A stretch of 64,000 nucleotides of DNA from Callorhinchus milii (taxonomy: Eukaryota): contig NW_024704755.1 of assembly GCF_018977255.1 (NCBI RefSeq), positions 15,314,001 through 15,378,000 on the forward strand, given 5' to 3'. Both the position numbers and the translations under genes were made by a program. This document shows, one piece after another, positions 1,096 through 39,044 of the stretch; position 1 is the first letter of the stretch; every line of letters begins with the position of its first letter. The notes beneath the pieces are model-generated. The model was not told the DNA's origin. It was given only the letters and a program-made list of their open reading frames with translations, and did no database searches.

Positions 1096-4000
1096 TTATG
1101 CGGTTCCTGACTCCATGAAAGTGCCATCTTCGTAGTTTCTGGTCTTTACCTCGGAATACTCTGAATTCTTGTCGCTGTGTTTAGCTTTTCCTGTATTTTT
1201 GGAGCGAGGCAAATCCAGAGCAGCGTATGTCAGCTTGTTAGCGGCTGCTCCTTGCTTGGTCTGCAAAAACAATGTTTGGTTTGTCTTTGTTTGTCTTTGT
1301 TACACAGAGAGATGTACATAGAATGGTACAGGAACTGACCATCCGGTGTTTATACTTCACACGAGCTCCATCCCTTCCTATTTGCTCCTATAACTCTCTT
1401 ATCTCTTCCCCTCATGTATGCAACACGTTTTAGGTTACATTATTCCAAACGCTTCACCCCATGGACGATTGGTAAATGTATTGCAAACTGCGATATGTAG
1501 CTGCAGATTTAAGGGTTTTAGATCTCAACGATGAGCTGACAACTGCTTTCATGGGTTGGCGAAGATCAGTTAGTGCTGCAATTCCTGATTGCTCTGTGGG
1601 ACATTGACATCTCAGGACGTCTGGATTGTAATATCTCTGATCCTCGTTAATTTATTTGCTGAATTGTTGACTCATTTATAAAGATAAAATCTAAGGACTA
1701 TATAGCTCAGAAGACCAGACGGCCCATCGTACACGTGCTGTATGTTTGAAAGAATTATCTATTGATTCCCATTTACCCGCCTTTTCGCCAACACTCCCTA
1801 AAATTGATCCGTTTTACATATCTTCATTATCTTTAGATAAATAAATGATATTGGTTGAATCCTGGAAAGCTGAAAATGTTCCACAACTAAATGCAGCATC
1901 GAAAACGAGGTAGAAGATTGGAGGAGGGGACAAAATCATAACGATGAAAGTCAATGAACCCAATTTACCAAACCTGTCCAATACAAGATTTCTCCATGCT
2001 GTGTACCTGGGCGTATACTGTCCTGTCTTCCTGATGTTTAGTTCTTGGAGTTTTATTGGAACTTCTCAAATCCAATGTTACATAAGCCACGTTGTCACCC
2101 GCTGCTGCCTCCCCCGCCTGTAAAACAAAGGTACGTGGTTGTTCCGTTGCCTTTCTTGGTCTGTCATCTTTGACCATGGAATTGAATAAGTGGAGGATTT
2201 AGGGGAAATAAACTGCTGTCAAGTTGAAATAGTTAAAGACATATCTTCATTAAGAAGATCGAGTTCTGTCTGGAGGCAGTGAAATTCATTTTTGCAACTG
2301 ATGTTTTGCAATCTATGCCCGTGAAAATATGTTGCATATCTGATTAGATGGATCAAACAAGAATTATCACTTAAAATATTATCACTTAAAACATGCTTGG
2401 ACTCCTCGTGTTCCAAGTCATATGGCTGACTCTGAAGGATTACTAGAAAATTAAATTACTGTCAGCAAACTTTATTTATTTATTTATTTATTTAAGTAAC
2501 AGCTTAATCCTGAAAAGGGAAATAAATAGGTCTGTAATTCTGGAGGAATGATGTTAAGGTGGGAAACTTTCAGTTCACAGTCCAAGTGAACATGAGCTCT
2601 ACCTTGTTGGAGGTTGGTTGTCAAACCAAGTTCCTGTATTCTTGTTAAGTTTACTTTAAAGATCATTTGAGAATCTTCTAACACAGAATGAGGTTTGTCC
2701 GGTGTCCTCGCGAATGGTAATCATGATAAATTGGCGAAACACTTCATGACAGTTTATCGGACCATATTGTGTGTAAGTTGGTTCGACCAAATAGAGTCGC
2801 TACAAAGACAACGATTGTTCATGAAGCATTTTAAGATGTTTGGAATGATACCGGCCACAATGATAATCACTGAATTGGTCCATTGGTCACCCAAATAATT
2901 TGGTGATAGACTTACCTGATCTTCAGGATTGCCCAATTGAGTCAGGTTTCCCTTTGATCCTAAATATAAATTAAATTTACTGAATGAAATATTTACTCAG
3001 TTTCAATATTAACACTAGAATAATATTATTGCTCTACATTTCAGGATGAGTGAAATAGAAATATTCGCCTGCACCCTTTTCCTTCTCTCTGAATCTCCCC
3101 TTCACTCATACTTTCCGAAATCCTCAAAACAGTGGAACTCTTTCCCTTGAACATTTTAAATTTCAAACTTGGCAACGCCTATCCACTATTCCTTAATCAT
3201 TTTCATTTCTCCTCTTGGCCGAGGCCACTCACCTGGGACTCTCCATAATAAAAACATATTTTCTATGTCACAATTTCAATATAATATTTAACTGAATTCT
3301 ATTGCTGATATACATCTGCTGTGAGTCCCTGCATTTATTTGATGCCATTCATCACTAGAGTTTCTTACAAATGCATGTAATTCATCGTATTTGAAGCCGA
3401 TTGCAATAGGTTAGAGCAGATTTCAGACACTGGATGTTGTAAAATGAGAAATTCTGGGATACTAAAGTTCACCATGTGAAATGATTACAGTCCCTAATCT
3501 GTTGCAATAACTACCAGTAATTGGCATTGTATAACCGTAGCTTCTACCTTCGAATTTGAAGTAACAATCAAGACACTTTTTTCCATTTGCTAACCCAGTG
3601 GTGCTTTCTAAAGTTTTGTATCAATGTGTAATATTTACAATTAATTGCAATGAAATCAGAATTTTCTTACCGTTTTTCTTTTTTAATTGGCATCGCTTCC
3701 CAAATATGATCACAAGCGCCAGAAATGCGAAACCACCCGCTGCACATCCAGCCCACAATAAATAATGGGTTACCTTGCTACTACCGAGAGAAACTGTGAA
3801 AAGTGAGGTGAAGCATTGTGCAGCGCATCAATTTGGACTTCCACTCATCGCAGTAGAATACAAATGTTATGCATATCATTAATGAATTATATTCGCAGTG
3901 ATAATATATTCGCAAACTGAGTATTAAGCCCAATAAGTTGTTTAAATATTATGACTAATCTTAATCTGTGCATTTATTGAAATAAGAAAAAAAATGACAG

Positions 4001-6812
4001 GAGCATCACCGAAAAGAGTTTGATATTTTGTAGTATAATTAATGACATCTGATCGCGCGTATTTTTATTAATGCTCTTGATTTTATTACACAGGCGAGGT
4101 GACACCAAAACGTACCACTGATTTTCACAGGAATCCCCACAAAGTACAAACCATAAATTGTAGTTTAAGACGGCTGTACCCAGTGACATCTCATCACAAG
4201 CAATGAAACGTGCTCACTTGTTATTAATAAAACGAGGGAACATTATGGAATAGAATTACATTTTGTGATCAAATGCCTTGTGTTAAAAAGAATTTGAAAA
4301 TTAAGCAGTTTTAGGATGCTTCCATGTATATAATATCTGTTAGGTTTAGCAAAACCTTCACATCAAAAGATACAATATATTTTATGACCATCATCCACAA
4401 CTCCCTCATCACCATTCTTAACACATTGGTCTCTCATCATATCAGCCATCGCTTCCTATCCCCTCAGGTTCCCCAGGACAACAGTCACACTCCATCCCTC
4501 AAGTCACAGTTTCTTGCTGCTGAACATTGGATGTTCCTCATGGCTCTATCCTCGGTCCTCTGCTCTTCACTATCTATATGCTCCCACTTGGCGACATCAC
4601 TGTAGACATGTATTGCATATTCACATGTACAATGATGAAAACCATCTTCCTCCACACTCGACCTCCAACTTCGACCCGATTGCTGTCAGACATCAAGTGA
4701 TTGATCAGCTCTGACTTTCTTCAGCTGAATAATAATAATAATCCATGCATTTTATACTTCGACTTATATATCGAATGCAAGGATTAATATTATTATTATC
4801 TCGTTATTGTTGTCTCAAATCGCTTCAGATGATTTACTTGATGAATCAATGCAACAAAGCATTCCTCTGAAAATTCAATTAATAACAGTTGACTTTTTAA
4901 AAATCTTTTAGCATCTTACCTTTAGATTTTGGGAAAGCGAAGGTGGCAATAGCTGAAGTCTTGAGGCTGACGTGAGACACCAGACAGGTATAAACAGACC
5001 CATTCTGGCCAGGCTGTGTGTCTTCGATAGAGCTCGAGGCCTTATAGAGATCCTCTGAGTTCTGCTTCTCAGTGGAACCTGACTCTTCCAGCTTTATTTC
5101 TGGTGTTGGCACAATTGTGGTGCCATCTTTATACCAAGTAAGGGTGATTTCCTTTGGGTGAAACAAGGCAGTTTCACACACAAGAGTCTGAGGCTTAGGT
5201 GAATTTCTAGAGAAAATCTTCAGTGGAGTTGGGGGAGCTGTGGAACAGATAATGGAGGAGAATCGTGTTAATTTTGATCAATCGATGGGACAAACTTTAT
5301 TTTGATTTGTATCCGATACATTTCTTTGCAAACTCCTGACGCCTGAGTACAAATAGAGGTTTTCTAAGATACACAAATATCCCTTCTCACAGCAGCATTG
5401 GCCTTACTCCTGCTTTAATTACTTTGTGCTTTTATCAATTAATATTTTAAATTAATATTTATGGTTAAGTTTGCAATACATTGGAATTCATTTGGGAGTT
5501 TTGATTTACCTACTCACTTTCCCTCAACTTACAGAGCTCAGAAACCATCCACATAAGGTGATATCACTTGTATATTTCCTTTATAATTTACTGCAGAAAT
5601 ATTCAAGATCTGAAACCATTTATAAATAAAAATCTGAATTTAATTTTGCTTCCACACTCCACACGCCTAATAATAATCCCTCAAGAAACAAAACAACAAT
5701 AAATTGGTCACTTCAATCCACGACTGTTTGTGGGAGACGACTGTGCGCAATTGGCTGCCGCATTTTGCCCACAAATATACAGTCAATTCACTTTACAGTA
5801 TATTCTGTGAAGTGCTTTGAGACATCGAGAAGACGTGAAAAGCGCTATATCAAATGCAAGAATTATTATTCTTATTATTATATTCATGTCCTTTATCTTT
5901 CATATTATTACTAACTTTGATGATTGGCAGGTAGAAATGATCACTTAGAAATGCCTAACCAATATGTTGAAGTGTCGAACAGAGGAGATAGAGGATTCCT
6001 GGCAGAGGTGTGCACACTGTGTTAGTGTGGATCAATTGGTTGTATTTTCGCCTCTGCGTTAGAATTTTGCTCTGCTGACCACTGCTGAATGATGGTGAGA
6101 AAATAATCATTTCATTTGAATATAGCGCCTTATCACATCTTCGAGACATCTCAAAGTACTTTAAAAGCCAGATTGTGAAAGTTATTAATGGACAAACGGT
6201 ATAAATAACGGTATAGCATTCACCGCATTTATTACTTGTTATGTAATTTCTAAACGCCAATTTTGCTCTTCATTCACACTCACCGCGCACAGTTAATCGT
6301 GATCCAGGTCCTGTTCCAATTATTGATCCCTGACGGACCACTAGACAGCGATAGACTCCAGAGTCCTGTAAACTCACATTCAGGAACTGGCAGAAGCCGC
6401 TTCCTTTAGTTTTTACACCAAATAGTTTCCTGAGATCCTCCTTTGTATCCAAATAGCCGCTCTCACCCTCCTTATGCCACTGCACCTTCACTCCTGAACC
6501 ATCTTGAGGGAAGCGAAAGATACAGTGGAAGGTGACATTTGTCCCTCTGATGACAGCCACATGGTCGGGGATTTGAGTCACTTTCAACGATGAATCGCCA
6601 GCAACTGTCAGAAAATAAAGTCAGAGTTCTTAGATGGTGAGCTATGGAGAAAACAAATGGGTAAAAGAGGAATAAATGTAACTATATAAGATAAATGGCA
6701 CACGGAAACAATTTGCACATGTTTCATAGAAGAACTGAATTATAGAATGAACATACACACCTGTTGAAATAATATATAAGGCAGACAGGCACAGAAAGAC
6801 CACATTCCTCAT
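1096..6812 (-). CDS. Gene A: VJ-C1-TM inhibitory Ig-superfamily receptor (NKp30/SIRP-like), 7 exons, about 377 aa
   Basis: Exons: leader 6812-6761 (MRNVVFLCLSALYIIST), V 6604-6284 (..VTFHC..VQW..DSGVYRC..GTGPGSRLTV), C1 5237-4920 (LVCETALFHPKEITLTW..YTCLVSH), TM 3793-3671 (YLLWAGCAAGGFAFLALVIIF-GKRCQ), linker 2959-2916, 2117-2007 (VAYVTL, TVYAQ), 1260-1096 (LTYAAL, SEYSEV, stop). All introns are GT-AG with phases 1-1-1-1-0-0. Total 1134 nt, no internal stop. Confidence 0.9.
4385..4700 (+). mobile_element. Old L2 RT relic in the C1-TM intron (paralogues at 17600-17900, 24000-24260, 31890-32220)
   Basis: CTATCCTCGGTCCTCTGCTCTTCACTATCTATATGCTCCCACTTGGCGACATC encodes an (S)ILGPLLFTIYMLPLGDI RT motif. 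It is shared by the paralogues, so it predates their duplication. Confidence 0.75.
5668..5882 (+). mobile_element. Partial SINE (other partial copies at 15095-15313 -, 22402-22630 +, 60184-60436 -, 63575-63956 +)
   Basis: Same body and/or tail as the full-length copies. Confidence 0.85.
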
Positions 6813-11069: not shown

Positions 11070-11324
11070 AAGGAAAGGAATGATGCAGAGGAAGGTGATG
11101 TTTGTCTCTGATGGCAATCACATATTCTGGGGTTAATGTTACTTTGACCGAAAAATAATCAATAACTATCAGAAAAAGAAGGCCAGATAGAGGCAGTAAC
11201 ATAACATCCCCGTCTCATGATTCTGAGCAGTTTTGACCCTGATCATCTGTAAAGAGCTGATCTGCAACAAGGCTGCATAAATGTTTTGCTGCGAAAAATG
11301 TTTCTGTGTCATTTGACTTCCTGT
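11070..11324 (-). pseudogene. Pseudogene G1: old leader/V relic with promoter ETS site
   Basis: Acceptor TTTTTCTGATAG, then KVTLTPEYVIAIR.. resembling KVTQIPDHVAVIR. A leader relic is fused next to the acceptor. ACTTCCTGT at 11316-11324. Confidence 0.6.
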
Positions 11325-12749: not shown

Positions 12750-13900
12750 TGATGCCATATCATCGAACCAAACTCGAATGAAGAAAATAAGTGTAGTACC
12801 AACCGCTCTGGGCGGCAATAAAAATGGAAGCTCTTAAGGCACAATAGCGCTTGGTGGCAATGAGTCTTCTTTTGGCTAACAAATTCTTATGTTCTTATTT
12901 TCTTAAGTTGTTATTGAAGCGTATTAAAGGTAAATTGGATAATATATCTAAAATACAGCTCAACACAAAGATTGGATGCATTTAACAGATTTCCGCTTGT
13001 CCTAGACATTGCTTTCATCTGGTGCAATGACAATCAACGATTGACTCAATTACCACATTCAACTTCATTGAACTTTTTATTTATTGCAACTCAAAATGAT
13101 GAAATCAAAGCTTTTATGTTCAATTATAATGCACAATACAAAGAACTTCATTTGAGATTTTAGACAAGTGGTATTTCAAATATCATACAAAAATACAATA
13201 AAACCTTTATTCTTTGCAATATCCTCACCGTCATCCTTACTAAACACAAATAGCTCTATTTTAACACAATAAAATATGTAATTTATGAGACTTGGTGATC
13301 AAGTCTCGGCAGTTCACACATGACAGTGTGTGCAATGTAAAAATTTATTTGAGCCTTGGAGGAGAATGAAAACTTGACTCAATTTCCTGGTGCAAAATTT
13401 GAAAGGTTTGCCAACTTGGAAACAAATAGCAACAAATTGGATTGTTTTTTGAATTACGCTAAAACAGACAGACTTTTTATTTTTAAAGAGCTGAAAAATG
13501 TGAATTGTTTAGGCTGGTCCAGTGAAATAATACAAAAGCAATATAGATCGAAGAGTAGACGCCTTCTGGATCCTTTTGTGGACAAGGCTCTGTGGCTACT
13601 GGTACATAGATTTCTTAACACCATCACCAACATCATTTTCAGCAGCAGTTGGAAAAATCAAAACACGTTCTACATTTGATGTACAGCTGGACTCCAGGGT
13701 ATGTCCTGAAATTAAAAAACATTATATTTGATGCGTTTGGTTTATTTTATTATGTTAGTAAGTGTTGGTTTATTGGAGCCAAGTTGTCCAAGCTGATGTA
13801 TTTTATTTTGACGTGGGTCTACGAAGAAAATTTGGGAATTTACTCATATAAACAGGTGAAAAACAAATAAGAGGTGGTATTTGAAATACATTCCAACTCC
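12750..13900 (+). mobile_element. Probable decayed Tx1/L1-clade LINE ORF2 C-terminus
   Basis: ORFs 13356..13679 (..ALWLLVHRFLNT) and 13649..13870 (E..HL..LKNII..FGL..FIG) resemble the zf-RVT region of Tx1 elements. Recognised by motif only. Confidence 0.4.
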
Positions 13901-14791
13901 TAAATGGTATAAATCAAATGCACTCAAATATGTTTGATACAGAATACCAGTCCATAATTTACGATCTTCTGTTTCTTCCAGTCAGTGTAATTCCATCAGC
14001 ACAATTCAATCACTTCTAATCTTTTCTTCCTTACTTCATCTATAACAAAACAAGCAGTGCAAATGAGAATATCACCAATCCTTTGATTCTTTGATTAATT
14101 GTAATAATTACTGCTTTTCACCCAAACAAATTGATGTTTCAATCTGAAATGTTTACAACGAGACTGCAAACATAAAATGTTTAGTTTCATTCTACACGGT
14201 TGCTAAACTTATTCAGATAACATGATTTGCAGTTAGATTGCACCTTTCATGTTGGAAGGAGGTCTTAAATTGCTTGGCTCAGTTTGTTGGGCACCGGAGC
14301 TGGAGACGGAAGCCGAAATATTACATGTGACTGCCTGATATCATTTGTCTCTAAGACAATATCAATTTATTATAACACTGGATATATTTTCAACTTATCT
14401 TCAAGAATATTCAGCCTTAGGGAAGCAGAGCTTATGAATGACGACATTAACATGAATATGATAACCAAGTAACAGATATGGAAGTTATTACATGAATATG
14501 TTGTTCAATATTGTTACAGATAACTGGAGAGTTGGATGAGATATTTATATAACCACTGATTATTAGAGAATCCTCCAACAAAACAAAACGTAATTCCCAC
14601 ATTTTGAACTATATTGTCCCGGTTGCCAACAACAACAACAACTTGGATTTATATAGTGCCCTCCATGCCGGACGGCTTGTCAGCGAACAACATAAACTTG
14701 TTTCCTCTCATTGATAATGTTAAGGCTTACGCCATAAACACAATAATTGTAAACGAAAGACAATGTCATTTTGAAACAAAGAAAGCCTTAC

Positions 14792-17700
14792 CGTTCAAAT
14801 GGTTTGGCTCTAATGCAGTCAACAATGAAGATTGTCAACACTATCAGTAGGAAGAAACATAATATAAACCGAAAAACCATCACATCGTTGGACATTCCAC
14901 GGTAACCTAGAAAACAAATATCGCACTGTAAAATGTTTACATGAAATCTACTGAATAATTAGACTGTATTGGGAAAGTGCACATGTTCTTAGATAATTGA
15001 TATTGGAAGCTACAATGAGGTGGACGATTATTATAAACTGCGCATTCAATTGATCCACAGCAAACAGTCGTGAATATCAGCAGGCAGTTTTTTGAATTGA
15101 CTGTATATTTGTGGGAGAAACACGGCAGCCAATTGCGCACAGCAGTGTCCCACAAACAGTAGTGGATTGAAAATGACCAATTTATTATTGTTTTGTTTTG
15201 GAGGAATTATTATTAAGTGTGTGAAGTAGGGAAAGTTGCGCAAGGTTTCGCCCTGCCTGCAATTGAACCCAGGTGTCTCGCTTGCAAGGCGAGTGCTCTA
15301 ACCACTGAGCTATAACATCACTGTGTTTAGTGAAGTTATAGAGAAACAGTTATACATTATGCGTTAAAAGTTCCCCTGAGACTGTTTGCTCAGCTTCAAA
15401 CGTACCAAATATGACCCCTGTTCCGACCCGAGCCATTGAGAAGCGGTTACCATCGTAATCAAAAATTATAGCATAGGACATCTGCTATCATATCGAAAAT
15501 TCTTTAAAACTTCTCACAAACGCGTTTTATTTTATGTGCGGTGATTGTTGTTATAAAGGAAAAGCAGCAGAAGATTTGATCGAAAAAGTCCTCAGTAAAT
15601 GGAACGGATTGATGGACGAATATTATTTGTGTTTTATTTGTGAACATTCATCAATCCAAAAGTCCAATTTCTGATTTCAAACCTAATTGCGTGTGGAACC
15701 CGCAGCACTATTGCACTTTAGAAGTTAGTAAATGACAAAAAATAACATTTTGTAGGAGACATATTTAGAATTTAATAACAAAACAAGAACATCCCCAGGT
15801 TTGAGGTATTCTTCGATTCAAAGACTATATATCTTTAGTTGATTGTGTTATATATAGACATTTACACACATGTAGTTTACAGCGAGAAACTTGTATGATT
15901 ATCAATTGCAGCGTAAATAAATGTAAATACAATTTCCAGTAACAAGGTGTTTAACAACAAAAGACAGAAAGACAAGATGTTTCCTGCCATACAATCCCGT
16001 GTCGGGTTTACAAACTGTGTCGCTGCGACTCCGGGAGTCCGGAGGTGCCGTGAGATGTCAGACAGCAATAACCAGCCCCGCGCTGTCCCGGCGGTATCTC
16101 TTCTCTGTGGCTACAGAGCTCGAAACTTCATAAAGTCCCTTTGAATTATTTCTTTATTACAATTTATCCCCGTTTTAACTTCACTGCCATCTTTATTCCA
16201 AGTGAGTTTGATATCTCCGGGTACAACCCACCCATATCACTCACAAAGTGTTCACGTCTTCTACTTGGAATAATGCGTTCAGTTTAGAGCAGTAAACAGT
16301 TCAGAGATAAACAGTTTAGAGATAAACAGTTTAGAGATATACCAGCCCGGGGGGATGGGTGGGGAGGGGGGGTGTTAAATTAGTGCAGGACACGTCCTTC
16401 TAGAAGAGGAATCAAAAATAAGGCAACATAATCTTAACATTGTGGCTGAACCCCTCAGAAGTGATGTGGGACGTTTCTCTTCAGATGGAATTTTGGAATT
16501 CACTCAAATCAATAGCCATAGATGCAGATTCAAACGGGATATTTAAAAGCAACATCGATAATAGTTTTAAGGGATATGGAAATTGGATTTAAAATTCTGC
16601 CGCCATTCCAGAGCAACAACAACCTGGATTTTTCTAGCGTCCTTCACCAGGAGATTGTTCCGAAGAAGACAGGAGATTTCACTATAATTAGAGATATAAG
16701 CAGAACTTCGCCGTTCACACCACAATTGCGCAAACAGTGGAGGTTTGATTGACCAAACTACTATGATTATTATTTTTAAAAAAATATTTTAAAGGGATTA
16801 TTAACCCCGGAAAAGCGATCCGCGAATCGACGGACAACTGGGTTCCTACTTACTGCTGGTAAACAGATGCCAAACATTTCGCCCTGACCGGGAATCGAAC
16901 CCAGGTCCCCTCGCATTGCATTGGATTGTCTATGACCTGGGACATTCGGAAAAAATGCGATCAAGATAGAAAAAAAAATTGGATATAGTAAACATTCTGG
17001 TTACGACGCTAAGGAGGGATATAAATGTTTGAAAGCATTGTAAGCTTTAGACATTTATGTATATAATTGATGAATACTGTTTTAATGTAAGTATTAAGCA
17101 CAGTTACCGGTTTAAATATTATAAATATTCTCAATCTGTGCATTTATTGAAAGCAGAATGAAAATTACAAGGAGATCAGAACTGAAAGCACTTTGATATT
17201 TTGTAGCTTAAGATAGGTGTAGCTAATGACATCTGATCACATTTATTGTTATGATTACTGTTGATTTTAATACACGGACGAAGGTGACACACGGGAAACC
17301 AAAACGGACACCTGATATTCAGAGGAAACCCACAAAATAAAATCCATAATTTGTAGAGTAAGGCTGTACCTATTGACTTCTGATCGCAGCGATAAAACAT
17401 GAAACATGCTATTAATAAATGGAAGGAACATTATGGGATGGAAAGACATTTTGTGATCAAATGTGTTGTGCTGAAACCAATGTTTTAAAAAGTGATGCGG
17501 GTTTAGGATACTAATATGCACATAGATAACAGCGGTTAAGTTTAACAAAATGTTTGATGATTCACAACAAATATTTCACAATCAAACAGTGGAATGCATT
17601 TGATCACCATCATGCACAATACTGTTGCCTCCTATTAACTCAGGCATTGCTTCCTATCCACTCAGGTCCCCCAGGACAACAGTCACATTCCATCCCTCAA

Positions 17701-19522
17701 GCCATAGGTAGTTGCTGCTGAACAATGTATGCTCCTCAGGGCTCTATCCTCGGTCCTATGCTCCTCACTATCTATATGCTCCATCCTGGAGACATCACCG
17801 TAGACATATATTGCACGTTCACATGTACGACAATGAAACTCAACACTCCCATCTTCCTCCACACTCGTCATCAAGCGATTGATGAGCTCTGACATTTGTC
17901 AGCTGAATAATAATAATAATCCATGCATTTTATATAGCAACTTATATATCGAATGCAAGGATTAATATTATTATTATTATCTCGCTATTGTCGTCTCAAA
18001 TCGCTTCAGATGATTTACTTTATAAATCCATGCAACTAAACATCCCTATGAAAATTCAGTTAACAACAGTTGACTTTTTAAAAATCTTTTAGCATCTTAC
18101 CTGCTTTAGGTTTTGGGAAAGCATAGGTGGCAATAGCTGAATTCTCGAGGCTGATGTGAGATACCAGACAGGTATAAACAGACCCTATCTGGCCAGGCTG
18201 TGTGACTTCAATAGAGCTTGAGGCCTTCTAGAGATCCTCCGAATTCTGCTTCTCAGTGGAACGTGTCTCTTCCAGCTTTATTCCTGGTGTTGGCACAATT
18301 TAGGTGCCATTTTCATACCAAATGAGGGTGACTTCCTTTGGGTGAAACAAGGCAGTTTCACACACAAGAGTCTGAGGTTTAGCTGAATTCCTAGAGAAAA
18401 TCTTCAGTGGAGTTGGGGGAGCTGCAGAACAGATAAGTGTTAATTTTGATCAATCGGCGGGACAAGCTTTATTTTGATTTGTATCTGATATATTTCTTTC
18501 TTTGCAAGCTTTGCTTAGATACACAAATATGCCTCTCATAGCCTTTCTCTGGCTTTAATTACTTTGCAGTTTTATCAAGTAATATTTATTCATAACGTTT
18601 ATATTGCATATTATTACTGACTTTGATGATTGGTAGGCAGAAATGATCACTTAGAAATGTCTCTTCAATATGTTGATCTCACAAACAGAGGAGATAGAGG
18701 ATTCCTGGCAGAGGTGTACACACTGTGTTAGTCTGACTATACTGATAGTATTTTCGCCTCTGAGTTAGAATTTCGTTATGTTGATCGCAGCCGACCGATG
18801 GTGATAAAATAATTGTTGCAATTGAATATAGTGCCTTATCACGTCTTCGAAATGTCTCAAAGCACTTTAAAAACTAGAATGTGAAAGTTATAATGGACAA
18901 ACAATATAAATGACAATATAGCATTCACTGCAGTTACTACTTCTTATGTAATTTCTAAATTCCAATTTCATTCTTCATTCACACTCACCGCGCACAGTTA
19001 ATCGTGATCCAGATCCTGTTCTAATTATTGATCCCTGACGGACCACTACACAGCGATAGACTCCAGAGTCCTGTAAATTCACATTCATGAACTGGAGAAA
19101 ACCACTTCCTTTAGTTTTCAAGCCAAATTGTTTCCTGCGATCCTCCTTTGTATCCAAATACCCGCTCTCACCCTCCTTATCCCATTGCACCTCCACTTCT
19201 GAACCATCTTGTGAGAAAGGAAAGATACAGTGGAAGGTAACGTTTGTCCCTCTGATGGCAGCCACACTTTCAGGGATTTGAGTCACTTTCACTGAAGAAT
19301 CGCCATCAACTGTCAGAAAATAAAGTGAAACACTGATTTCTCAGATGGTGAGCCATGGAGGAAACAAATGAGTAAGAGAGAAAATAACTTAAGTATATAT
19401 AATAAATGTCAAAAGAAAAGTAGTTTGCACACATTTCATAGAATAATTGAATTATTGAATGAACATAAACCTGTTGAAATAATATGTAAGGCCGACAGGT
19501 ACAGAAAGACAACACTCTCCAT
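14792..19522 (-). CDS. Gene B: chimeric paralogue; either a C1-skipping activating receptor (leader-V-TM with Arg) or a pseudogene
   Basis: Intact leader 19522-19471 (MESVVFLYLSALHIIST) and intact V 19309-18989. Intact TM exon 14906-14792 (tag/gtaag; GYRGMSNDVMVFRFILCFFLLIVLTIFIVDCIRAKPFE) with Arg codon at 14871-14869. Both intervening C1 exons are disabled. A possible terminal mini-exon at 14523-14514 (R-Y-L-stop) is speculative. Confidence 0.55.
15985..16275 (-). pseudogene. Decayed D-type C1 exon inside gene B
   Basis: Aligns to gene D C1 (LTWNKDGSEVKTG..GLYEVSSS). It is frameshifted, the first Cys is TGT>AGT, the GT donor is lost (GGCAG|GAAAC), and the 5' end is replaced by a 15-bp tandem repeat. 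Confidence 0.8.
16285..16340 (+). repeat. Short tandem repeat (AAACAGTTTAGAGAT, about 3 copies)
   Basis: Directly visible; occupies the place of the 5' end of the D-type C1 relic. Confidence 0.8.
18101..18421 (-). pseudogene. A-type C1 pseudo-exon of gene B
   Basis: Colinear with the C1 exons of A and C, but has in-frame TAA (18302-18300) and TAG (18230-18228). A 12-nt pyrimidine-rich stretch upstream of its acceptor in A (GATTCTCCTCCA) is missing. Confidence 0.85.
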
Positions 19523-19597
19523 GTCTGACTCTGGCTCTGATGGTCCGTAACAAGTGAACGTGGATTGTTTGATACAGAGTAGGTTGTTGTGACACTG

Positions 19598-19639
19598 ACT
19601 TCCTGTTTCTTTGGGTTCGTGAAATGTATCTGGTGTGGT
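19598..19639 (-). promoter_or_regulatory. Putative proximal promoter of gene B
   Basis: ACAGGAAGT at 19606-19598; TGTGGT at 19634-19639. Confidence 0.5.
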
Positions 19640-21767
19640 GGGTGCAGTTTGAAATCACATTTCCACAGTAAAATTGTGAAAGAATAACCCATCCTATTAA
19701 GAGCATTAAAAAGCTAAGTGTATATAAACTTAAAAACCACAGTTTAGCATCATTAATAGTTTATGGTGCTTTCTCCAACTGTAAATGTTGGTTTGAGCAT
19801 CAACTCGTGGAACCAGTTGTGTCAGAAACATTTCAATCTGATGAAAAATTTCTTCTCGTACTTTTATCCAGCTGTCCCCTATTTATAGAAACTAAACTTT
19901 CCCTCTCTTCTGGCATAGTGCTCCGCTTTAAAACCATTGTAATTACTCCATCAAAAAGAATATCCCCGTCCCTCTAAACTATCCAATTATTGGCCCATCT
20001 CCAACTTGCCCTTGGTAGCCAAAGTTCGGTCACTCAACTTTGCTCCCACCTTTTTCTCCACTCGGTGCTAGAAATCTTCCTCCTTGTCTTCTCCTGTGGC
20101 TTACTGCACCCACTGTGTGTCGCTATCAGTGGCCGAACCATCAGTTCTTTGCCCACAAAATAAACACAGTCGCACCATTTCACAATATATCCTGCAAAAT
20201 TCTTTTGAAACATTTCAACACATGATAAGGTGATACATCAATCAAGGATTGTACTGTAATTATTATTAGATTCCTACGCCCTATCTTTTGCAAATCCCTC
20301 CATCTTGCACTTTGTTTCACTGTTTCCCAATCTGTCTTTGTCCTGATTCATTTCCTACCTCTTCAAACATGTCTATGTCCACCTCTCTCCCCGCTGCCTT
20401 TCCCTTGCTCAGTGTCCAACCCAAACACTTTGAAGCCCACCAAGATTATACACTATGAGAACGCTGCTATAGAGTAATAATAATCCTTGTGCCTTATCAC
20501 GTCTTCAAAACGTATCAAAGCACTTCACAGAATATACTGTAAAGTGAGTCGAATTGATGCTGTACAAATGTGAATTGTTGCTGTTGATAAGTAACAAATA
20601 ATCTGATCAATGCAGGAAAGTTTCTTACACAAATCTATGCAAATTATATATTGTAGGGACATAATGGTGATCTGTCATGTGGCGAAGCAGACTACATCAT
20701 ATTTATACTGTGAAAAGCTGTAATCTACACTTTTGTTTCCCTCGTTCACCTGTTGCACCTTTGTTTGACTCGCTCAGGATTTCTGCGTGTACCCGATGCC
20801 TCTGCTGCACCTTCAAGCTACTCCTGCCTTAATCCTTGTACCACACATTCGTTTTAAGTGTCTTTAAATCAGACTTGAAGATTTTCCACTTTGCCTGTGC
20901 ATATGGTCAATTTGCCAAGCAGACACTTTCACCCACAAATCGCACACCACTTCATGTAGTAAGAATACATATTTCTTGTTACATAAACAATGAAATATTG
21001 TGCACTGTTGGTACAGCCACTTTATACATTAAGCACAGCCTAATTGATGGAAAAGTTAATAACCCGTGGTCTATATAGAATGTAAGCGAGAGGAACTCTT
21101 GTAATGGAATTCTCCTCTGACATTTACATATATAGCAGAACGATTGGTGTTTTAATACTTAATTGTTTCATGTTAGGTATATTTTTTAGCTTTTACGTGA
21201 AAATTTCAATACCACACTTTAAATTTTTCACTGCGTATGAATTGTGCCACATTTTGTTGGCCTGCTTTTAAGTTAGCCCGTACCAAGTGTTGTTTCATTT
21301 ATACTGAAGGAACAGAGCATCAAACTTGTCAATATGAGCTAGTCTGATTCACTGTACATGTTATCAGGCATAACCTCACGGGAATTTTGATTGCACAGAA
21401 TCCTCAGTCTCAAATGTGGATGATGCTCGTAGATAGTGTTCGGCAGCATTCAGCCGAAGCAAAATATATGTATGTTTTGGAGGGTTAGACATTAAATCCT
21501 AGAAGTTCCACACAAAATATTCAACAGGCTACGTTTCATGAATTGTGCACAACCTTGATGTTGCTATTAGTAGTGGGAATGATCATTGTAATGGAGCCCT
21601 GGGTTGAGCAACAGACCACACACTTGGCATTTAAGGCTGATCAATGATGAGCGCGTGAGAACCCGAGATTGTTCAATTGGAGAGAAGAAGAAGAAAGGGT
21701 CATTTTCTTGGTGTTCTCTGAATACAAAGAGTATAAATAAACTGTCCTCAAATAATATGTTTAATGA

Positions 21768-28955: not shown

Positions 28956-31900
28956 TTATGCGGTTCCTGACTCCATGAAAGTGCCATCTTCGTAGTTTCT
29001 GATCTTTACCTCGGAATACTCTGAATTCTTGTCGCTGTGTTTAGCTTTTCCTGTATTTTTGGAGCGAGGCAAATCCAGAGCAGCGTATGTCAGCTTGTTA
29101 GCGGCTGCTCCTCGCTTGGTCTGAAAAAACAATGTTTGGTTTGTCTTTGTTACACAGAGAGATGTACATAGAATGGTACAGGAACTGACCATCCGGTGTT
29201 TATACTTCATACGAGCTCCATCCCTTCCTATTTTCTTCTATAACTCTCTTATCTCTTCCCCTCATGTATGCAACACGTTTTAGGTTACATTATTCCAAAC
29301 GCTTCACCCCCAAGGACGATTGGTAAATGTACTGCAAACTGCGATATGTAGCTGCAGATTTAAGGGTTTTAGATCTCAACGATGAGCTGACAACTGCTTT
29401 CATGAGTTGGCGAAGATTGGAGGAGGGGACAAAATCATTACAATGAAAGTCAATGAACCCAATTTACCAAATCTGTTCAATACAAGATTTCTCTATGCTG
29501 TGTACCTGGGCGTATACTGTCCTGTCTTCCTGATGTTTAGTTCTTGGAGTTTTATTGGAAGTGCTCAAATCCAATGTTACATAAGCCACGTTGTCACCCG
29601 CTGCTGCCTCCCCCGCCTGTAAAACAAAGGTACGTGGTTGTTCCGTTGCCTTTCTTGGTCTGTCATCTTTGACCATGGAATTGAATAAGTGGGTTTAGGG
29701 AAAAAAAACGTCTGCTGTCAAGTTGAAATAGTTAAAGACATATCTTCATTAAATGTATCGAGTTCTGTCTAACAGTCAGTGAAATTCATTTTTCCAACCG
29801 ATGTTTTGAAATCCACCCTGTTAAAATATGTTGCATACCTCATTAGTCGGATCAAACAAGAATGATTACTTAAAATATTATCACTTAAAACATGCTGGGA
29901 CTACTCATGTTCCATGTCATATGCCTGACTGGGAAGGAATACTAGAAAATTAATTTACTGATAGCAAACCATAATTATTTAAGTAACAACTTAATCCTGA
30001 AAGGGGAAATAAATAGGGCTGTAATTCTGGAGGAATGATGTTAAGGTGGGAACCTTTCAGTTCATAACCCAAGTCAGCATGAGCTGTACCTTGTTAGAGG
30101 TTGGTTGTCAAACCAAGTTCCTGTACTCTTGTTAAGTTTACTTTAAAGATCATTTGAGAACACAGAATGAGGTTTGTCCGGTGTCCTCGCGAATGGTAAT
30201 CATGATAAATTGGCGAAACACTTCATGACAGTTTATCGGACCATATTGTGCGAAAGTTGGTTCGAGCAAATAGAATCGCTACAAAGACAACGATTGTTTA
30301 TGAAGCATTTTAAGATGTTTGGAATGATACCGGCCACAATGATAATCACTGAGTTGGTCCATTGGTCACCCAAATGATTTGGTGATAAACTTACCCGATC
30401 TTCAAGATTGCCCAATCGAGTCAGGTTTCCTTTTGATCCTAAATATGAATTAAATTTACGGAATGAAATATTTACTCGATTTCAATATTAATTCACTAGA
30501 ATAATATCATTGTTCTACATTTCAGGATGAGTGAAATAGAAATATTTGCCTGCACCCTTTTCCTTCTCTCTGAATCTCCCCTTCACTCATACTTTCCGAA
30601 ATCCTCAAAACGGTGGAACTGTTTTACTTGAACATTTTAAATCTCAAGCTTGGCGACGCCTTTCCACTATTCCTTAATTCTTTTCATTTTTCCTCTTGGC
30701 CGAGGCCACTCACCTGGGGCTCTCCATCATAAAAACTTATTTTCGATGTCACAATTTCAATATAATGTTTAACTATTGCTAATAAATATACATCTGCATT
30801 TATTTGACTCCATTCATCACTACAGTTACTTACAGTTACTTACAAATGCACGCAATTCATCGTATTTGAAGCCGATTGCAATATGTTAGACAGATTGCAG
30901 ACATTTGATGTTGTAAAATGAGAAATTCTGCGATACTGAAATTCACCATGTGAAATAATTACAGGGCTGAATCTGTAGCAATAACTACCAGTAATTGGTA
31001 TTGTATAACCGTAGCATCACAGAACTCTACCTTCAAATTTGAAGTCACAATCAAGCCACTTGTTTTTCCATTTGCTAACCCAGTGGTGCTTTCTAACATT
31101 TGGTATTAATGTGTAATATTTACAATTAATTGCAATGAAATCAGAATTTTCTTACCGTTTTTCGTTTTNAATTGGCATCGCTTCCCAATTATGATCACAA
31201 GCGCCAGAAATGCGACCCCTCCCACTGCACATCCAGCCCACAAAATATAGTCAGTTACATTTCCACTACCTAGAAAAACAGTGCAAACTGAGGTGAAACA
31301 CTGTGCAACGCAACAATTCATAGTTCCTGTCATCGCAGAAGAATAGAAATGTTATGCATATCATTTATGAATTTTATTTGTAGTGATTCAAACTGAGTAT
31401 TAAGCACCACATGCGGTTTAAATATTTTGACTAATCTTAATTTGTGTATTTATTGAAATAAGAATAAAAATGACAGGATCATCACCGAAAACAGTTTGAT
31501 ATTTTGTAGTGTTACTAATGACATCTGATCGCTCTTATTTTTATTAACGCTCTTGATTATATTACACACGGGAGGTGACACGCAGAACACACAGACACCA
31601 AAACGTACCATTGATTTTCAGAGGAATCCCCACAAAATACAAACCATAAATTGTAGAGTAAGACGGCTGTACCCAGTGACATCTCATCACAAGCAATGAA
31701 ACATGCTCACTTGTTATTAATAAAACGAGGGAACATTATGGAATAGAATTACATTTTGTGATCAAATGCCTTGTGTTAAAAAGAGTTTGAAAATTAAGCA
31801 GTTTTAGGATGCTTCCATGTATATAATATGTTAGGTTTAGCAAAACCTTCACATCAAACATTACACATTCAAAAGATACAATATATTTTATGACCATCAT

Positions 31901-34397
31901 CCACAACTCCCTCACCACCATTCTCAACACATTGGTCTCCCATCATATCAGCCATCGCTTCCTATCCCCTCAGGTTCCCCAGGACAACAGTCACACTCCA
32001 TCCCTCAAGCCACAGGCAGTTGCTGTCGAGCAATGTGTATTCCTCATGGCTCTATCCTTGGTCCTCTGCTCTTCACTATCTATATGCTCCCACTTGGCGA
32101 CATCACTGTAGACATGTATTGCATATTCACATGTACAGTGATGAAAGCCAACTCTCCCATCTTCCTCCACACTCGACCTCCACCTTCGACCCAATTGCTG
32201 TCATAAATCAAGTGATTGATCAGCTCTGACTTTCTTCAGATGAATAATAATAATAATCCTTGCATTTTATATAACGCCTCTTATATAGAATGCAAGGATT
32301 AATATTATAATCTCGTTATTGTCAACTCAAATCGCTTCAGACATTTTATTATATGAAGAAATGCAACTAAACATCCCTAGGAAAATTCAGTTAACAACAG
32401 TGGACTTTTTAAAAATCTTTCAGCACCTTACCTGCTTTAGGTTCTGGGATAATGTAGCTGGCAATAGCTGAAATATTGAGGCTGACGTGAGACACTTGAC
32501 AGGTATAAACAGACTCTAACTGTGCGCCTTCAATAGAGCTCGAGGCCTTATAGAGTTCTTCTGAGTTCTGCCTCTCAGTGGAACCTGACTCTTCCAGCTT
32601 TATTCCTGGTGTTGGCACAATTTTGGTGCCATCTTTATACCAAGTGAAGGTGATTTCCTTTGGGTGAAACAAGGCAGTTTCACACACAAGAGTCTGAGGC
32701 TTTGGTAAACTCCTAGAGAAAATCTTCAGTGGAGTTGGGGGCACTGCAGAACAGATAATGGAGAAGAATTGTATTAATTTCGATGAATTGATGGGAAAAA
32801 TTTTGTTTTGATTTGTATCTGATACATTTCTTTGCAAGCACCTGATTCCTGAGTACAAATGGAGGTTTATTTAAATACACAAATATTCTTCTCACAGCAG
32901 CATCGCCCTTCCTCCTGCTTCAACTACGTTATGGTTTTATGAAGTAATACTCATTCATAACCTCATCTTGTATATTATTACTAATTTTAATGATTGGCAG
33001 GTGGAAATAATCACTTAGGAATGTCTATTGAATACACTGAACTCCCGAACAGAGGAGGTAGAGAATTTCTGACTGAGTTGTGCACACTGTGTTAGTCTGG
33101 CTCAGTTGGTAGTATTCTGGCCACTGAGTTCAAAGGATTTTGTGGAGTCCTGTAGCTCAGTGGTTAGAGCACTCGCTTTGCAAGTGAGAGACCTGAGTTC
33201 AATTCCAGGCAGAGAGCGAAATCTTGGGCAAGTTTCCTTACTCCACACAGAGCCTAATAATAATCCCTGCAAAACAAAAAACAATAATAAATTGGTCATT
33301 TTCAATCTACGACTGTTTGTGGGACATTGCTGTGTGCAATTGGCTGCCGCGTTCGCCCACAAATATACAGTCAATTCACTTTACAGTGTGTTCTGTGAAG
33401 CGCTTTGGGACGTCCTCCCGATGTGAAAAGCGCTATGTCAAATGCAAGGATTATTATTATTATATTATTATTATTTGTGTTCGAGCTCCACATTGGGACT
33501 TGGAATTTACATTGTCTATCTTGACACACACGCTGCAATGTCGGAGCTACCATCCTTAGTATGAGAAATTAAAACTTGGTGCCTTCTGATTGCTCAGGTG
33601 GACATTGAAGACCTCATGACACTAGTCAAAAAACAGAATGGAGTTTCCCTGGGGTCCTGGCCAACATTAACCCAAATACAAAAAAATGGTTAGGGTGAAT
33701 ATCGTGCCTTATCGGGTCTTTGAGACATCTCAAAGCACATTAAAAACTAGATTGTGAAAGTTATAATGGAAAAAGAATATAAATAATTATTTAGCATTCA
33801 CCACATTTATTACTTTTTATATAATATCTAAATGCCAATTTCGCTCTTCATTCACACTCACCGCACACAGTTAATCGCGATCCAGATCCTCTTCCAATTA
33901 TTGATCCCTGACGGACCACTACACAGCGATAGACTCCAGAGTCCTGTAAACTCACATTCAGGAACTGGAAGAAGCCTTTTCCTTTAGTTTTTACACCAAA
34001 TAGTTTCCTGCGATCCTCCTTTGTATCCAAATAGCCGCTCTCACCCTCCTCATCCCACTGCACCTTCACTCCTGAACTGCCTTGAGGGAAGGGAAAGTTA
34101 CAGTGGAAGGTGACATTTGTCCCTCTGATGGCAGCCACATGGTCGGGGATTTGAGTCACTTTCACCGAAGCATCGCCATCAACTGTCAGAATATAAAGTC
34201 AAACACTGACTTCTTAGATGATGAGCAATTGAGAAAACAAACGAGTAAAAGAGGAGAAAACGTAAGTGTATAAGATAAATGTCACATGGAAACAAGTTTG
34301 CACATATTTCATAGAAAAACTGAATTATAGAATGAACATATATACCTGTTGAAATAATATGTAATGCAGACAGGTACAGGAAGACAACACTCCCCAT
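28956..34397 (-). CDS. Gene C: VJ-C1-TM inhibitory receptor, close paralogue of gene A, about 372-378 aa
   Basis: Exons: leader 34397-34346, V 34182-33862, C1 32743-32432, TM 31269 (or 31287)-31156, linker 30438-30395, 29616-29506, 29120-28956. The frame is open. One ambiguous base (n at 31169) falls in a TTN codon (Leu/Phe, cannot be a stop). Confidence 0.88.
33144..33474 (+). mobile_element. Full-length tRNA-Ala-derived SINE with Deu-domain 3' part and L2-type tail
   Basis: A/B-box head GTAGCTCAGTGGTTAGAGC..GAGTTCAATTCC with TGC anticodon loop; body TGTGGGACATTGCTGTGTGCAATTGGCTGCC; L2-like GCGCTTTGGGACGTCC..GTGAAAAGCGCT; (ATT)n tail. Confidence 0.9.
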
Positions 34398-38980: not shown

Positions 38981-39044
38981 AATAGGATTAAAAACAAATA
39001 GAATGGCAGGAGGCAGCAAACACTGAATGAATATTTTGGATGGA

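What the first reader, a model, noticed from the sequence alone, without database searches (positions are those of the whole stretch)
14792..19522. Gene B may make an NKp30-like activating receptor by skipping two dead C1 exons
Seen: leader, V and an Arg-containing TM exon (VMVFRFILCFFLLIVLTIFIV) are open with canonical splice sites. The first C1 carries two stops and a shortened polypyrimidine tract; the second has lost its acceptor region and donor. V ends in phase 1 and the TM exon starts in phase 1, so V-to-TM splicing is in frame and gives about 165 aa. Known: an N-terminal TM Arg is how NKp30/NKp46 pair with CD3zeta/FcRgamma. Inference: loss confined to C1 converted a V-C1 receptor into a V-only activating partner whose V closely resembles those of inhibitory A and C. 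An annotator would probably call it a pseudogene.
Basis: partly seen in the sequence, partly recalled or inferred. Interest (0 to 1): 0.8.

Follow-up and report, generated by a model that had tools for sequence, protein, structure and literature searches.

The report
Broken hybrid activating-type immune receptor gene
In an elephant-shark cluster of paired immune receptors, gene B joins an intact ligand-binding V exon to a real, unannotated arginine-bearing membrane exon, but its constant-domain exons are dead, so it is most likely a decaying hybrid copy rather than a proven new NKp30-like receptor.

Summary
The window is Callorhinchus milii (MU249845.1). It holds a minus-strand tandem cluster of V-C1-TM receptors with ITIM tails (genes A, C, D). 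Gene B has an open leader and V. Its first C1 has two point nonsense codons. Its second C1 is a wreck. Its 115-nt Arg-TM exon is open and splice-competent.

New findings:
- The Arg-TM exon is a real exon type. It is the reciprocal best match of the TM exon of an intact V-C1-TM(Arg) gene in the sevengill shark. Four further copies lie in this genome (three distinct sequences), all open.
- B is a mosaic. An A/C-type 5' half is fused to the 3' half of a D-type activating gene, so the "second C1" belongs to that other gene.
- No protein or gene model on record contains the Arg-TM exon.
- The Arg-TM copies diverge about as fast as their flanks.
- The stop-bearing C1 keeps usable splice sites.
- NKp30 is not a specific match. 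SIRP-like paired receptors fit as well or better.

Verdict: B is probably a pseudogenised hybrid. A V-only activating isoform by exon skipping is possible, because C1-skipped models exist for paralogues, but it is unproven.

The parts
19471..19522 (-). Gene B leader exon (MESVVFLYLSALHIIST, 52 nt, exits in phase 1)
   Evidence: Leaders 76-94% identical at 6812 (A), 34397 (C) and 52989.
18989..19309 (-). Gene B V exon (VJ-type V-set domain, open, phase 1/1)
   Evidence: Pfam V-set, E = 3e-11; all 10 family-invariant residues kept; AlphaFold pLDDT 89.9.
18101..18421 (-). First C1 exon (A/C type), disabled by two point nonsense codons: TAA at 18302-18300 and TAG at 18230-18228. The acceptor tract is shortened by ~12 nt and the donor is intact.
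   Evidence: The Ensembl-derived protein P0032 ends at the first stop.
16290..17090 (-). Junction zone. Homology to A and C ends at ~17050-17090. A SINE-like piece follows (16985-16834), then D-type V-C1 intron sequence (16688-16480), then low-complexity sequence and a tandem repeat (~16400-16290).
15981..16282 (-). Second C1 relic (D type). The 5' end and acceptor are missing, there are frameshifts, stops occur in all frames, and the donor has changed from GT to GC.
15093..15312 (-). tRNA-derived SINE in the intron (a family with 12 or more copies in the window)
14792..14906 (-). Arg-containing TM exon (115 nt, enters in phase 1, exits in phase 2). The stop TAA overlaps the donor if the exon is left unspliced.
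14366..14415 (-). Candidate terminal coding segment (R)LNILEDKLKIYPVL*, with AATAAA at 14371-14366. It lies in a block (14545-14346) that is better conserved among paralogous copies than the TM exon itself. This assignment is an inference.
13966..14073 (-). Second conserved downstream block around a strong acceptor (ttgttttgttatag|). Its role is unknown.
1096..6812 (-). Gene A, the inhibitory neighbour. Seven exons give a clean 377-aa L-V-C1-TM protein with tyrosine motifs VAYVTL, TVYAQT, LTYAAL and SEYSEV.
28959..34397 (-). Gene C, the inhibitory neighbour with the same architecture. Its TM exon contains the single N of the window, which was left unfilled.
   Evidence: P0003.

Best explanation
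Gene B is a hybrid copy from the activating arm of a birth-and-death cluster of paired V-C1 receptors, and it is most likely no longer a working receptor gene.

Origin. B arose when the 5' half of an A/C-type gene (promoter, leader, V, C1 and most of the C1-TM intron) became joined to the 3' half of a D-type activating gene (part of the V-C1 intron, C1, an Arg-TM exon and a short tail). The D-type C1 decayed first. The A/C-type C1 later acquired two nonsense point mutations.

Expected output (inferred). That C1 keeps a usable acceptor and a perfect donor, so default splicing should include it. This places a premature stop well upstream of the last junction, which gives nonsense-mediated decay or at most a truncated 164-aa secreted fragment. 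The in-frame V-to-TM(Arg) transcript could arise as a minor skipped isoform. If it did, it would be a V-only type I protein with an Arg in the outer third of the membrane span and a very short tail. That is the format that recruits an ITAM adaptor through a buried acidic residue.

Shown: the anatomy, the mosaic origin, and the homology of the TM exon. Inferred: the splicing outcome and the signalling.
For: Species and family. Homologues at E = 1e-276 to 1e-21 are all from cartilaginous fish. The closest are Callorhinchus milii 'SIRP-alpha-like' proteins. Window 60538-32696 is 100% identical to MU249845.1.

Mosaic structure. B 17052-18766 aligns with A 3920-5447 and with C 31362-33130. B 15327-16246 aligns with D 47263-48125, and B 14978-15077 with D 47144-47245.

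Two stops lie in an exon whose splice sites are still usable.

The Arg-TM exon is real:
- Its exon-anchored, ungapped alignment with the TM exon of P0024 (L-V-C1-TM(Arg)-tail, H. perlo) has the same phase, 37 full codons in both, Arg and IVD at the same positions, a BLOSUM62 score of 46, and p ~ 3e-4 against shuffles that preserve the TM organisation.
- It is the reciprocal best tblastn hit (E down to 1.3e-6).
- Four further copies in this genome (three distinct sequences) all keep AG, GTAAG, 115 nt, the open frame and the Arg.

Signs of decay:
- Three-way variable fraction is 26/115 in the exon and 173/710 in the flanks (Fisher p = 0.73).
- Between B's copy and the L003:730 copy there are 17 nonsynonymous and 1 synonymous changes.
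- B's copy is the one least like the shark exon (33% versus 40-43%).
- The D-type C1 next to the TM exon died by different lesions in different copies.
- Sister units are broken in other ways. B' is truncated in the middle of an inhibitory TM exon. B2 lacks most of its V.
- No protein or gene product with this exon is on record.
Against: B's leader, V and Arg-TM exons have no lesion at all.

V keeps every family-invariant residue. The branch separating B from A and C has 9 synonymous against 10 nonsynonymous codon changes. That is an excess of synonymous changes (p = 0.017), although this branch also includes the A/C stem.

Under a neutral simulation, the chance that the three diverged TM copies all keep their splice sites, open frame, Arg/Lys and an apolar core is 0.036. 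In addition there are no indels where 1.9 would be expected. So some constraint on the exon type is likely.

NCBI models P0002 and P0017 join V directly to TM while an intact C1 exon lies between them. Skipping is therefore a family habit, and B's weakened C1 acceptor would favour it.

The absence of annotation is weak evidence, because genes with stops are not given proteins.
Confidence: 0.55

Rival explanations
1. B is a working gene whose normal product skips both dead C1 exons. The result is a 163-177-aa V-only receptor whose TM Arg recruits an ITAM adaptor (CD3-zeta, or a DAP12-like or FcR-gamma-like chain). It would serve as the activating partner of the inhibitory receptors A and C.
For: The junction is in frame, with strong sites at both ends. 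V is intact and 83% identical to A and C. The Arg-TM exon is homologous to that of an intact shark V-C1-TM(Arg) gene. C1-skipped models exist for paralogues. B's C1 acceptor tract is shortened. The second C1 has no splice sites and would be ignored. The neutral simulation gives p = 0.036 for retention of the exon's features. Possible terminal exons and a poly(A) signal downstream are conserved.
Against: No transcript or protein evidence was found. The stop-bearing C1 still has a good acceptor and a perfect donor. The dN/dS values do not separate V from C1. B's TM copy carries mostly nonsynonymous change. The only public model of B includes C1. One survey found no FcR-gamma in sharks (PMC4016189), so the adaptor is uncertain.
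Confidence: 0.2
2. B makes a soluble product. Transcripts that include C1 escape decay and give a secreted 164-aa protein (V plus the first 39 residues of C1), which acts as a decoy for the ligand of A and C.
For: The Ensembl/UniProt model A0A4W3H256 (P0032) is this product except for residue 2 (Gly there, Glu in the window). NCBI also models gene C as a 235-aa TM-less V-C1 form.
Against: A half C1 domain lacking its second cysteine would probably misfold. The stop lies far upstream of later junctions, so decay is expected. The model may rest on protein alignment alone. The exact product is not on record in the gene-position index.
Confidence: 0.1
3. All Arg-TM modules in the elephant shark are dead relics of one ancient D-type activating gene, carried along by segmental duplication. 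B's V and this exon are neighbours only by accident of rearrangement and are never spliced together.
For: Exon divergence equals flank divergence. The L005 copy has no V or leader within 6.7 kb upstream and only half a C1. The copies travel with 12-15-kb duplications (window 15093-1 matches L003 15308-30383 at 98.9%; L003 1-~11500 closely parallels L002 1-~11500, with feature positions matching within ~17 nt and the Arg-TM exon plus 400-nt flanks identical). The junction zone is low-complexity and repeat sequence.
Against: Recognisable homology, equal codon count and equal phase with a functional shark exon, across the split between holocephalans and elasmobranchs, are hard to keep in a long-dead relic. 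All copies remain open with intact splice sites (simulation p = 0.036). Two downstream blocks are more conserved than background.
Confidence: 0.15

Closest known systems
SIRP-alpha / SIRP-beta paired receptors
   Same: A V-set domain followed by C1-set domains. The inhibitory members (A, C, D) have a tail with four tyrosine motifs arranged like SIRP-alpha's. The counterpart has a near-identical V, a basic residue in its TM and a short tail. NCBI auto-names several cluster members 'tyrosine-protein phosphatase non-receptor type substrate 1-like'. SIRP-alpha D1 is the top Foldseek hit for B's V.
   Different: SIRPs have V-C1-C1, whereas these genes have a single C1. SIRP-beta uses Lys and DAP12, whereas here the residue is Arg and the adaptor is unknown. 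No orthology was shown. The Foldseek ranking is not discriminating.
NKp30 (NCR3)
   Same: The hypothetical skipped product would have a single VJ-type V domain (GxGxxLxV J-like motif), an Arg near the outer end of the TM and a short tail. NCBI names one C1-skipped paralogue 'natural cytotoxicity triggering receptor 3-like' (P0017).
   Different: NKp30 is natively V-only, whereas B carries C1 exons. NKp30 is not among the top 60 PDB sequence hits and ranks 47 by fold. Neighbouring members are ITIM receptors. The published shark NCR3 family study (Kinlein et al. 2021) could not be read here.
Heptranchias perlo P0024 (NCBI 'immunoglobulin lambda-1 light chain-like', 287 aa)
   Same: It belongs to the same receptor family (E = 3.5e-35 to gene A). 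Its TM exon is homologous to B's: same phase, 37 codons, and Arg and IVD in register. Its tail is short and has no ITIM.
   Different: It has an intact V-C1 ectodomain. Its TM exon is 114 nt and exits in phase 1 (B's is 115 nt and exits in phase 2). Its tail exon is unrelated.
Activating KIR / LILRA / PIR-A genes and their pseudogenes in mammalian leukocyte receptor clusters
   Same: Tandem birth-and-death clusters. Activating members are built by recombination between an inhibitory-type ectodomain and a TM with a basic residue. Hybrid and disabled copies are frequent.
   Different: The Ig domain types differ (C2/I-set there, V plus C1 here). There is no sequence relationship. This comparison rests on general knowledge and was not tested here.

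Membership tests
Cartilaginous-fish V-C1-TM ITIM receptor family (auto-named SIRP-alpha-like / NCR3-like / tapasin-related) | VJ-type V-set domain with the family's invariant residues | tested here: met
   Q10, P12, G20, N22, C27, W42, D80, Y84, C86 and G98 are all present in B. Pfam V-set E = 3e-11.
Cartilaginous-fish V-C1-TM ITIM receptor family (auto-named SIRP-alpha-like / NCR3-like / tapasin-related) | One intact C1-set domain exon | tested here: not met
   B's first C1 has two stops and the second is a relic. A's C1 is intact (Pfam C1-set E = 6e-10).
Cartilaginous-fish V-C1-TM ITIM receptor family (auto-named SIRP-alpha-like / NCR3-like / tapasin-related) | Uncharged TM exon followed by ITIM/ITSM tail exons | tested here: not met
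   No homologue of A's TM, e5, e6 or e7 exons lies between 14792 and 6900. B belongs to the cluster but not to its inhibitory form.
Activating member of a paired-receptor pair | Basic residue in the outer part of a single TM span | tested here: met
   VMVFRFILCFFLLIVLTIFIV has Arg at position 5 of 21. The Arg is kept in all five copies in this genome and in H. perlo.
Activating member of a paired-receptor pair | Ectodomain closely similar to an adjacent inhibitory receptor | tested here: met
   B's V is 83% identical to the V of A and of C, which carry ITIM tails.
Activating member of a paired-receptor pair | Short tail without inhibitory motifs | tested here: inconclusive
   Every candidate continuation gives 1-16 residues and none contains an ITIM, but the real 3' end is unknown.
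Activating member of a paired-receptor pair | Uninterrupted reading frame through constitutive exons, and expression | tested here: not met
   Two stops lie in an exon with usable splice sites. No product is on record. Expression itself cannot be tested here.
Activating member of a paired-receptor pair | Association with an ITAM adaptor through the TM charge | not testable with these tools
   Needs co-expression and co-immunoprecipitation. One survey found no FcR-gamma in sharks (PMC4016189).
NKp30 / NCR3 | Natively V-only ectodomain | tested here: not met
   The gene carries two C1 exons between V and TM. A V-only product would need both to be skipped.
NKp30 / NCR3 | Specific sequence or fold similarity of V to NKp30 above other V domains | tested here: inconclusive
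   NKp30 is not in the top 60 PDB sequence hits. In Foldseek it ranks 47 at E = 4.8e-8, against 4.9e-9 for SIRP-alpha.
NKp30 / NCR3 | MHC linkage and B7H6-type ligand | not tested
   The chromosomal context beyond the fetched loci was not examined.
SIRP family | V-C1-C1 ectodomain | tested here: not met
   A, C and D each have one C1. B's two C1 relics come from two different genes.
SIRP family | Inhibitory member with four cytoplasmic tyrosine motifs | tested here: met
   Gene A has VAYVTL, TVYAQT, LTYAAL and SEYSEV.

The most novel reading that the evidence does not exclude
B, and perhaps its sister units, are expressed mainly as C1-skipped transcripts. The elephant shark would then have turned a V-C1 paired receptor into a V-only, Arg-TM activating receptor by killing its C1 exons. 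That would be a living example of the route by which a V-only receptor of the NKp30 format could have arisen from a V-C1 ancestor. It would use an Arg-TM exon that predates the split between holocephalans and elasmobranchs and is missing from current annotation.
Probability: 0.15. Interest if true: 0.65.

Novelty: new member of a known kind. Interest (0 to 1): 0.35.

Why it matters
Paired activating and inhibitory receptors are well known in mammals, birds and teleosts, but are poorly charted in cartilaginous fish.

This locus shows that the elephant-shark V-C1/ITIM cluster has an activating-type Arg-TM exon lineage. The exon is homologous to that of a sevengill-shark gene, so it is old. It is present in five copies, and no public protein model contains it.

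That matters for annotating these genomes and for dating the activating/inhibitory pairing principle.

For gene B itself, the practical message is caution. Intact exons with good splice sites and a compatible phase do not make a working gene. The exon between them keeps its splice sites, and the cluster is full of rearrangement by-products.

Tried and rejected
1. Exhaustive HMMER search with the 38-aa TM peptide against 1.84 billion representatives. The only hit was a repetitive 995-aa protein (NGVYTFRFVLADYDEK repeats), which is spurious.

2. Two word-indexed searches, one with the V-TM product and one with a 71-aa junction peptide. Neither found a protein carrying the TM exon.

3. BLASTP of the TM peptide against P0024 gave no alignment, most likely because of BLASTP's default low-complexity and composition settings. 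My own ungapped scoring and unfiltered tblastn recovered the match.

4. PDB sequence searches with B's V and with a family V profile. They were dominated by multi-Ig proteins and did not help with family placement.

5. I first read L003 as an allelic version of the B/A region from another assembly, with an intact C1. I rejected this when window 60538-32696 proved 100% identical to L004 of the same record. L003 and L002 are paralogous units downstream in the same assembly.

6. The counts are too small to separate them.

7. Exact-product look-ups for P0032, the window's 164-aa version, two V-TM variants, gene A and P0009. None is on record.

8. The key shark NCR3 papers (PMC8273117, PMC3709836) are not held.

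9. Rfam and tRNA scans of 11000-20000 found only the SINE's tRNA-like head.


Full report
**What the window is.**
Gene A, assembled from seven exons with canonical splice sites, gives a clean 377-aa protein: leader, V, C1, TM and a tail with VAYVTL, TVYAQT, LTYAAL and SEYSEV. Pfam confirms V-set and C1-set domains.

Its homologues all come from cartilaginous fish. The closest are Callorhinchus milii proteins with automatic names such as 'tyrosine-protein phosphatase non-receptor type substrate 1-like', 'NCR3-like' and 'tapasin-related'.

Window 60538-32696 is 100% identical over 27,843 nt to MU249845.1 of GCA_018977255.1. So the window is elephant shark, with record coordinate = window coordinate + 15,314,000.

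All genes lie on the minus strand:
- E, partial
- a leader plus pseudo-V fragment (52989/52776)
- D, which is P0006
- C (34397-28959)
- an intron relic (24263-23333)
- B
- A (6812-1096)

**The observation.**
- Leader: 19522-19471.
- V: 19309-18989.
- First C1: 18421-18101. It has two in-frame stops, TAA at 18302-18300 and TAG at 18230-18228. Both are single-base changes from the A/C state, with no frameshift.
- The C1 acceptor has lost about 12 nt of the pyrimidine tract seen in A and C. A serviceable ttatctgttctgcag| and a perfect CAG|gtaaga donor remain.
- Second C1: about 16282-15981. It lacks its 5' end and acceptor, carries frameshifts and stops in all frames, and has GC in place of the donor GT.
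- TM exon: 14906-14792, 115 nt, with a good acceptor and a GTAAG donor. It encodes (G)YRGMSNDVMVFRFILCFFLLIVLTIFIVDCIRAKPFE.

V exits in phase 1 and the TM exon enters in phase 1, so the junction reads through as Gly. The TM exon exits in phase 2. If it is not spliced further, the frame ends at once (cgGTAA), giving 163 aa.

A strict scan of both strands for phase-1 exons with good splice signals found 12 candidates in 128 kb. The only hydrophobic ones were the TM exons of A and C and this exon. It is not a chance open frame.

**Is the Arg-TM exon a real exon type?**
No paralogue exists elsewhere in the window, and no protein in the large databases contains it.

Among the family hits, one protein has an Arg in its TM. 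This is P0024 from the sevengill shark Heptranchias perlo, with the layout L-V-C1-TM(Arg)-short tail.

Its TM exon in the genome (L001:17216-17329) starts in phase 1 with GT, like B's. It has 37 full codons, like B's, and ends ...GAAG|gtaaga against B's ...GAACG|gtaagg.

The exon-anchored, ungapped alignment has these properties:
- 11 of 38 identities
- the Arg and the IVD motif in register
- BLOSUM62 score 46, against 22-27 for the best ungapped local scores of A's and D's TM exons against the same shark exon
- p about 3e-4 against shuffles that preserve the flank-core-flank layout

Unfiltered tblastn makes the two exons reciprocal best hits in six-frame searches. The shark peptide picks B's exon as the top hit in the window (E = 0.011). 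It picks the four other elephant-shark copies as the top four hits in 119 kb of fetched loci (E down to 5e-6). The elephant-shark peptides pick the P0024 exon in the shark locus (E = 1.3e-6).

I conclude that this is an old activating-type TM exon of this receptor family.

**More copies in the same genome.**
Loci fetched through annotated paralogues hold further copies of the exon:
- L003:15495-15609. It lies in a 15-kb segmental duplicate of window 15093-1 (98.9% identity) and has 3 nt differences in the exon.
- L003:730-844, which is identical to L002:747-861.
- L005:23917-24031.

All are 115 nt, keep AG and GTAAG, are open, and keep the Arg.

Their contexts differ:
- B' (L003:10001...) has an intact V and C1. 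It breaks off in the middle of an inhibitory-type TM exon, where it joins post-C1 intron sequence.
- B2 (end of L003) has a leader and an open C1 but has lost most of its V.
- The L005 copy sits behind half a D-type C1, with no V nearby.

The D-type C1 beside the TM exon is damaged by different lesions in B and in L005. It was therefore intact in their common ancestor, which would have been a D-type V-C1-TM(Arg) gene like P0024.

**B is a mosaic.**
B matches A and C from upstream of the leader down to about 17050-17090, which is roughly 100 bp before where their TM exon would lie. Below that come a SINE-like piece, D-type V-C1 intron sequence, the C1 relic (74% identity to D over 928 bp, continuing into D's C1-TM intron as far as 14978), and then the unique Arg-TM region.

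So the 'second C1' is not a second domain of one receptor. It and the TM exon are the 3' half of another gene. The switch zone contains low-complexity sequence and a short tandem repeat.

**Tests of constraint.**
- V exon. Omega between B and A or C is 0.41. On the branch separating B from A and C there are 9 synonymous and 10 nonsynonymous codon changes, an excess of synonymous change (p = 0.017). That branch also includes the A/C stem.
- C1 exon. Omega is 0.49-0.74, with 5 synonymous and 8 nonsynonymous changes. V and C1 do not differ (Fisher p = 0.72).
- Arg-TM exon, rate. Among three diverged copies the exon varies at 26 of 115 sites and the flanks at 173 of 710, which is no difference (p = 0.73).
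- Arg-TM exon, kind of change. Changes between B's copy and the L003:730 copy are 17 nonsynonymous to 1 synonymous. They are mostly conservative. Only 1 of 10 variable core sites is a second codon position (p = 0.10).
- Neutral simulation. With the observed numbers of substitutions, all three copies keep their splice dinucleotides, open frame, Arg/Lys and an apolar core in 3.6% of runs. No indel occurred where 1.9 would be expected.

Together these results point to weak or intermittent constraint on the exon type. They give no sign that B's own copy is protected, and B's copy is the one least like the shark exon.

Two blocks downstream (14545-14346 and 14073-13966) are better conserved among copies than the exon itself. 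The first contains a conserved acceptor, the frame (R)LNILEDKLKIYPVL*, and AATAAA directly at the stop. It is a candidate terminal exon, unproven.

**Would C1 be skipped?**
Points in favour:
- NCBI model P0002 joins V directly to TM although an open C1 exon lies between them in L002.
- P0017 is a C1-less isoform of another paralogue.
- B's C1 acceptor is weakened.

Points against:
- The acceptor and donor are still good.
- The only public model of B (UniProt A0A4W3H256) includes C1 and stops at the first TAA.
- No product with the V-TM junction is on record.

The evidence behind the NCBI models cannot be seen here.

**Comparison with known families.**
B's V folds confidently as a V domain (pLDDT 89.9). 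Its Foldseek neighbours are V domains in general: SIRP-alpha D1 at rank 1, shark vNAR, TCR V, PD-L1, and NKp30 at rank 47, all within a tenfold range of E-value. The C1 of A is closest to IgM C-mu, TAPBPR, B7-H6 and MHC C1 domains.

By function, the cluster most resembles SIRP-type paired receptors: V plus C1, a four-tyrosine inhibitory tail, and a counterpart with a basic TM residue. It differs in having one C1 rather than two. The NKp30 format (V only, TM Arg) would apply only to a skipped isoform. Pairing of a TM Arg with an acidic residue of CD3-zeta or FcR-gamma is established knowledge for NKp30 and NKp46. For sharks, one survey found no FcR-gamma (PMC4016189), so the adaptor is open.

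**Verdict.**
The anatomy is confirmed. The Arg-TM exon is a real, old and unannotated exon type, and finding that is worthwhile.

Gene B itself is best read as a hybrid, recently disabled member of the activating arm of a fast-turnover cluster (confidence about 0.55). A functional V-only activating isoform is possible (about 0.2) and easy to test with junction reads.

Noticed in passing
window 14545-14346 and 14073-13966: These two blocks downstream of the Arg-TM exon are more conserved among the paralogous copies than the exon itself (three-way variable fraction 0.12-0.15 against 0.25-0.33 background). The first holds a conserved acceptor, a short frame ending ...KIYPVL* (a YxxL motif) and AATAAA at the stop.
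   Followed up: partly
window 6604-6284 versus 34183-33863 (V exons of A and C): A and C differ at 3 synonymous and 18 nonsynonymous sites (dS 0.04, dN 0.078, omega ~1.9). This looks like diversifying selection on V, or patchy gene conversion between two inhibitory genes.
   Followed up: partly
window 1-1140 versus 27860-29000; window 15093-1 versus L003 15308-30383: There are very recent duplications. The 3' ends of A and C are 99.1% identical. A 15-kb block (C1 relic, Arg-TM exon and the whole of gene A) recurs at 98.9% identity further downstream (its copy ends ~58 kb beyond the end of the window) in the same assembly.
   Followed up: yes
window 6812-1096 (gene A); L003 10001-29291: Gene A looks fully intact, but its exact 377-aa product is not on record. 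The NCBI model for the paralogous pair (P0001, 489 aa) runs B' and A' together and has no TM segment, so the annotation of this cluster appears unreliable.
   Followed up: partly
L003 12371-12460: In the sister unit B', an inhibitory-type TM exon stops abruptly after ...AGCAAGGFA and continues as sequence that normally lies 20 nt into the post-C1 intron. This is a clean non-homologous rearrangement junction.
   Followed up: yes
window 52989-52678, 21859-21768, 11151-11065, 24263-23333: Relics are scattered between the genes: a leader plus a V fragment with a stop upstream of D, two short V relics about 2.3 kb and 4.3 kb upstream of the leaders of B and A, and an isolated piece of post-C1 intron that shares B's breakpoint.
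   Followed up: partly
window 8512-10666 versus 38383-40599 (also 52-60 kb): G+C-rich blocks with strong GC skew (GC 0.42-0.49, skew up to +0.33) are repeated between gene units at ~78% identity. They are probably a transposable element inserted upstream of A. Not identified.
   Followed up: no
window 15093-15312 and 11 or more other sites (e.g. 5650-5881, 22402-22629, 24862-25197, 33142-33475): A tRNA-derived SINE family is present in both orientations at 85-96% identity. Its head scores as tRNA in Rfam (32 bits), but ARAGORN calls no tRNA.
   Followed up: partly
window 31169: The single N of the window falls inside the TM exon of gene C. It was left as X and not filled.
   Followed up: no
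window 19519-19517 versus P0032: The UniProt/Ensembl protein for gene B starts MGSVV, whereas the window reads MESVV (GAG). Either this is a polymorphism between assemblies, or the model borrowed a leader from another copy.
   Followed up: no
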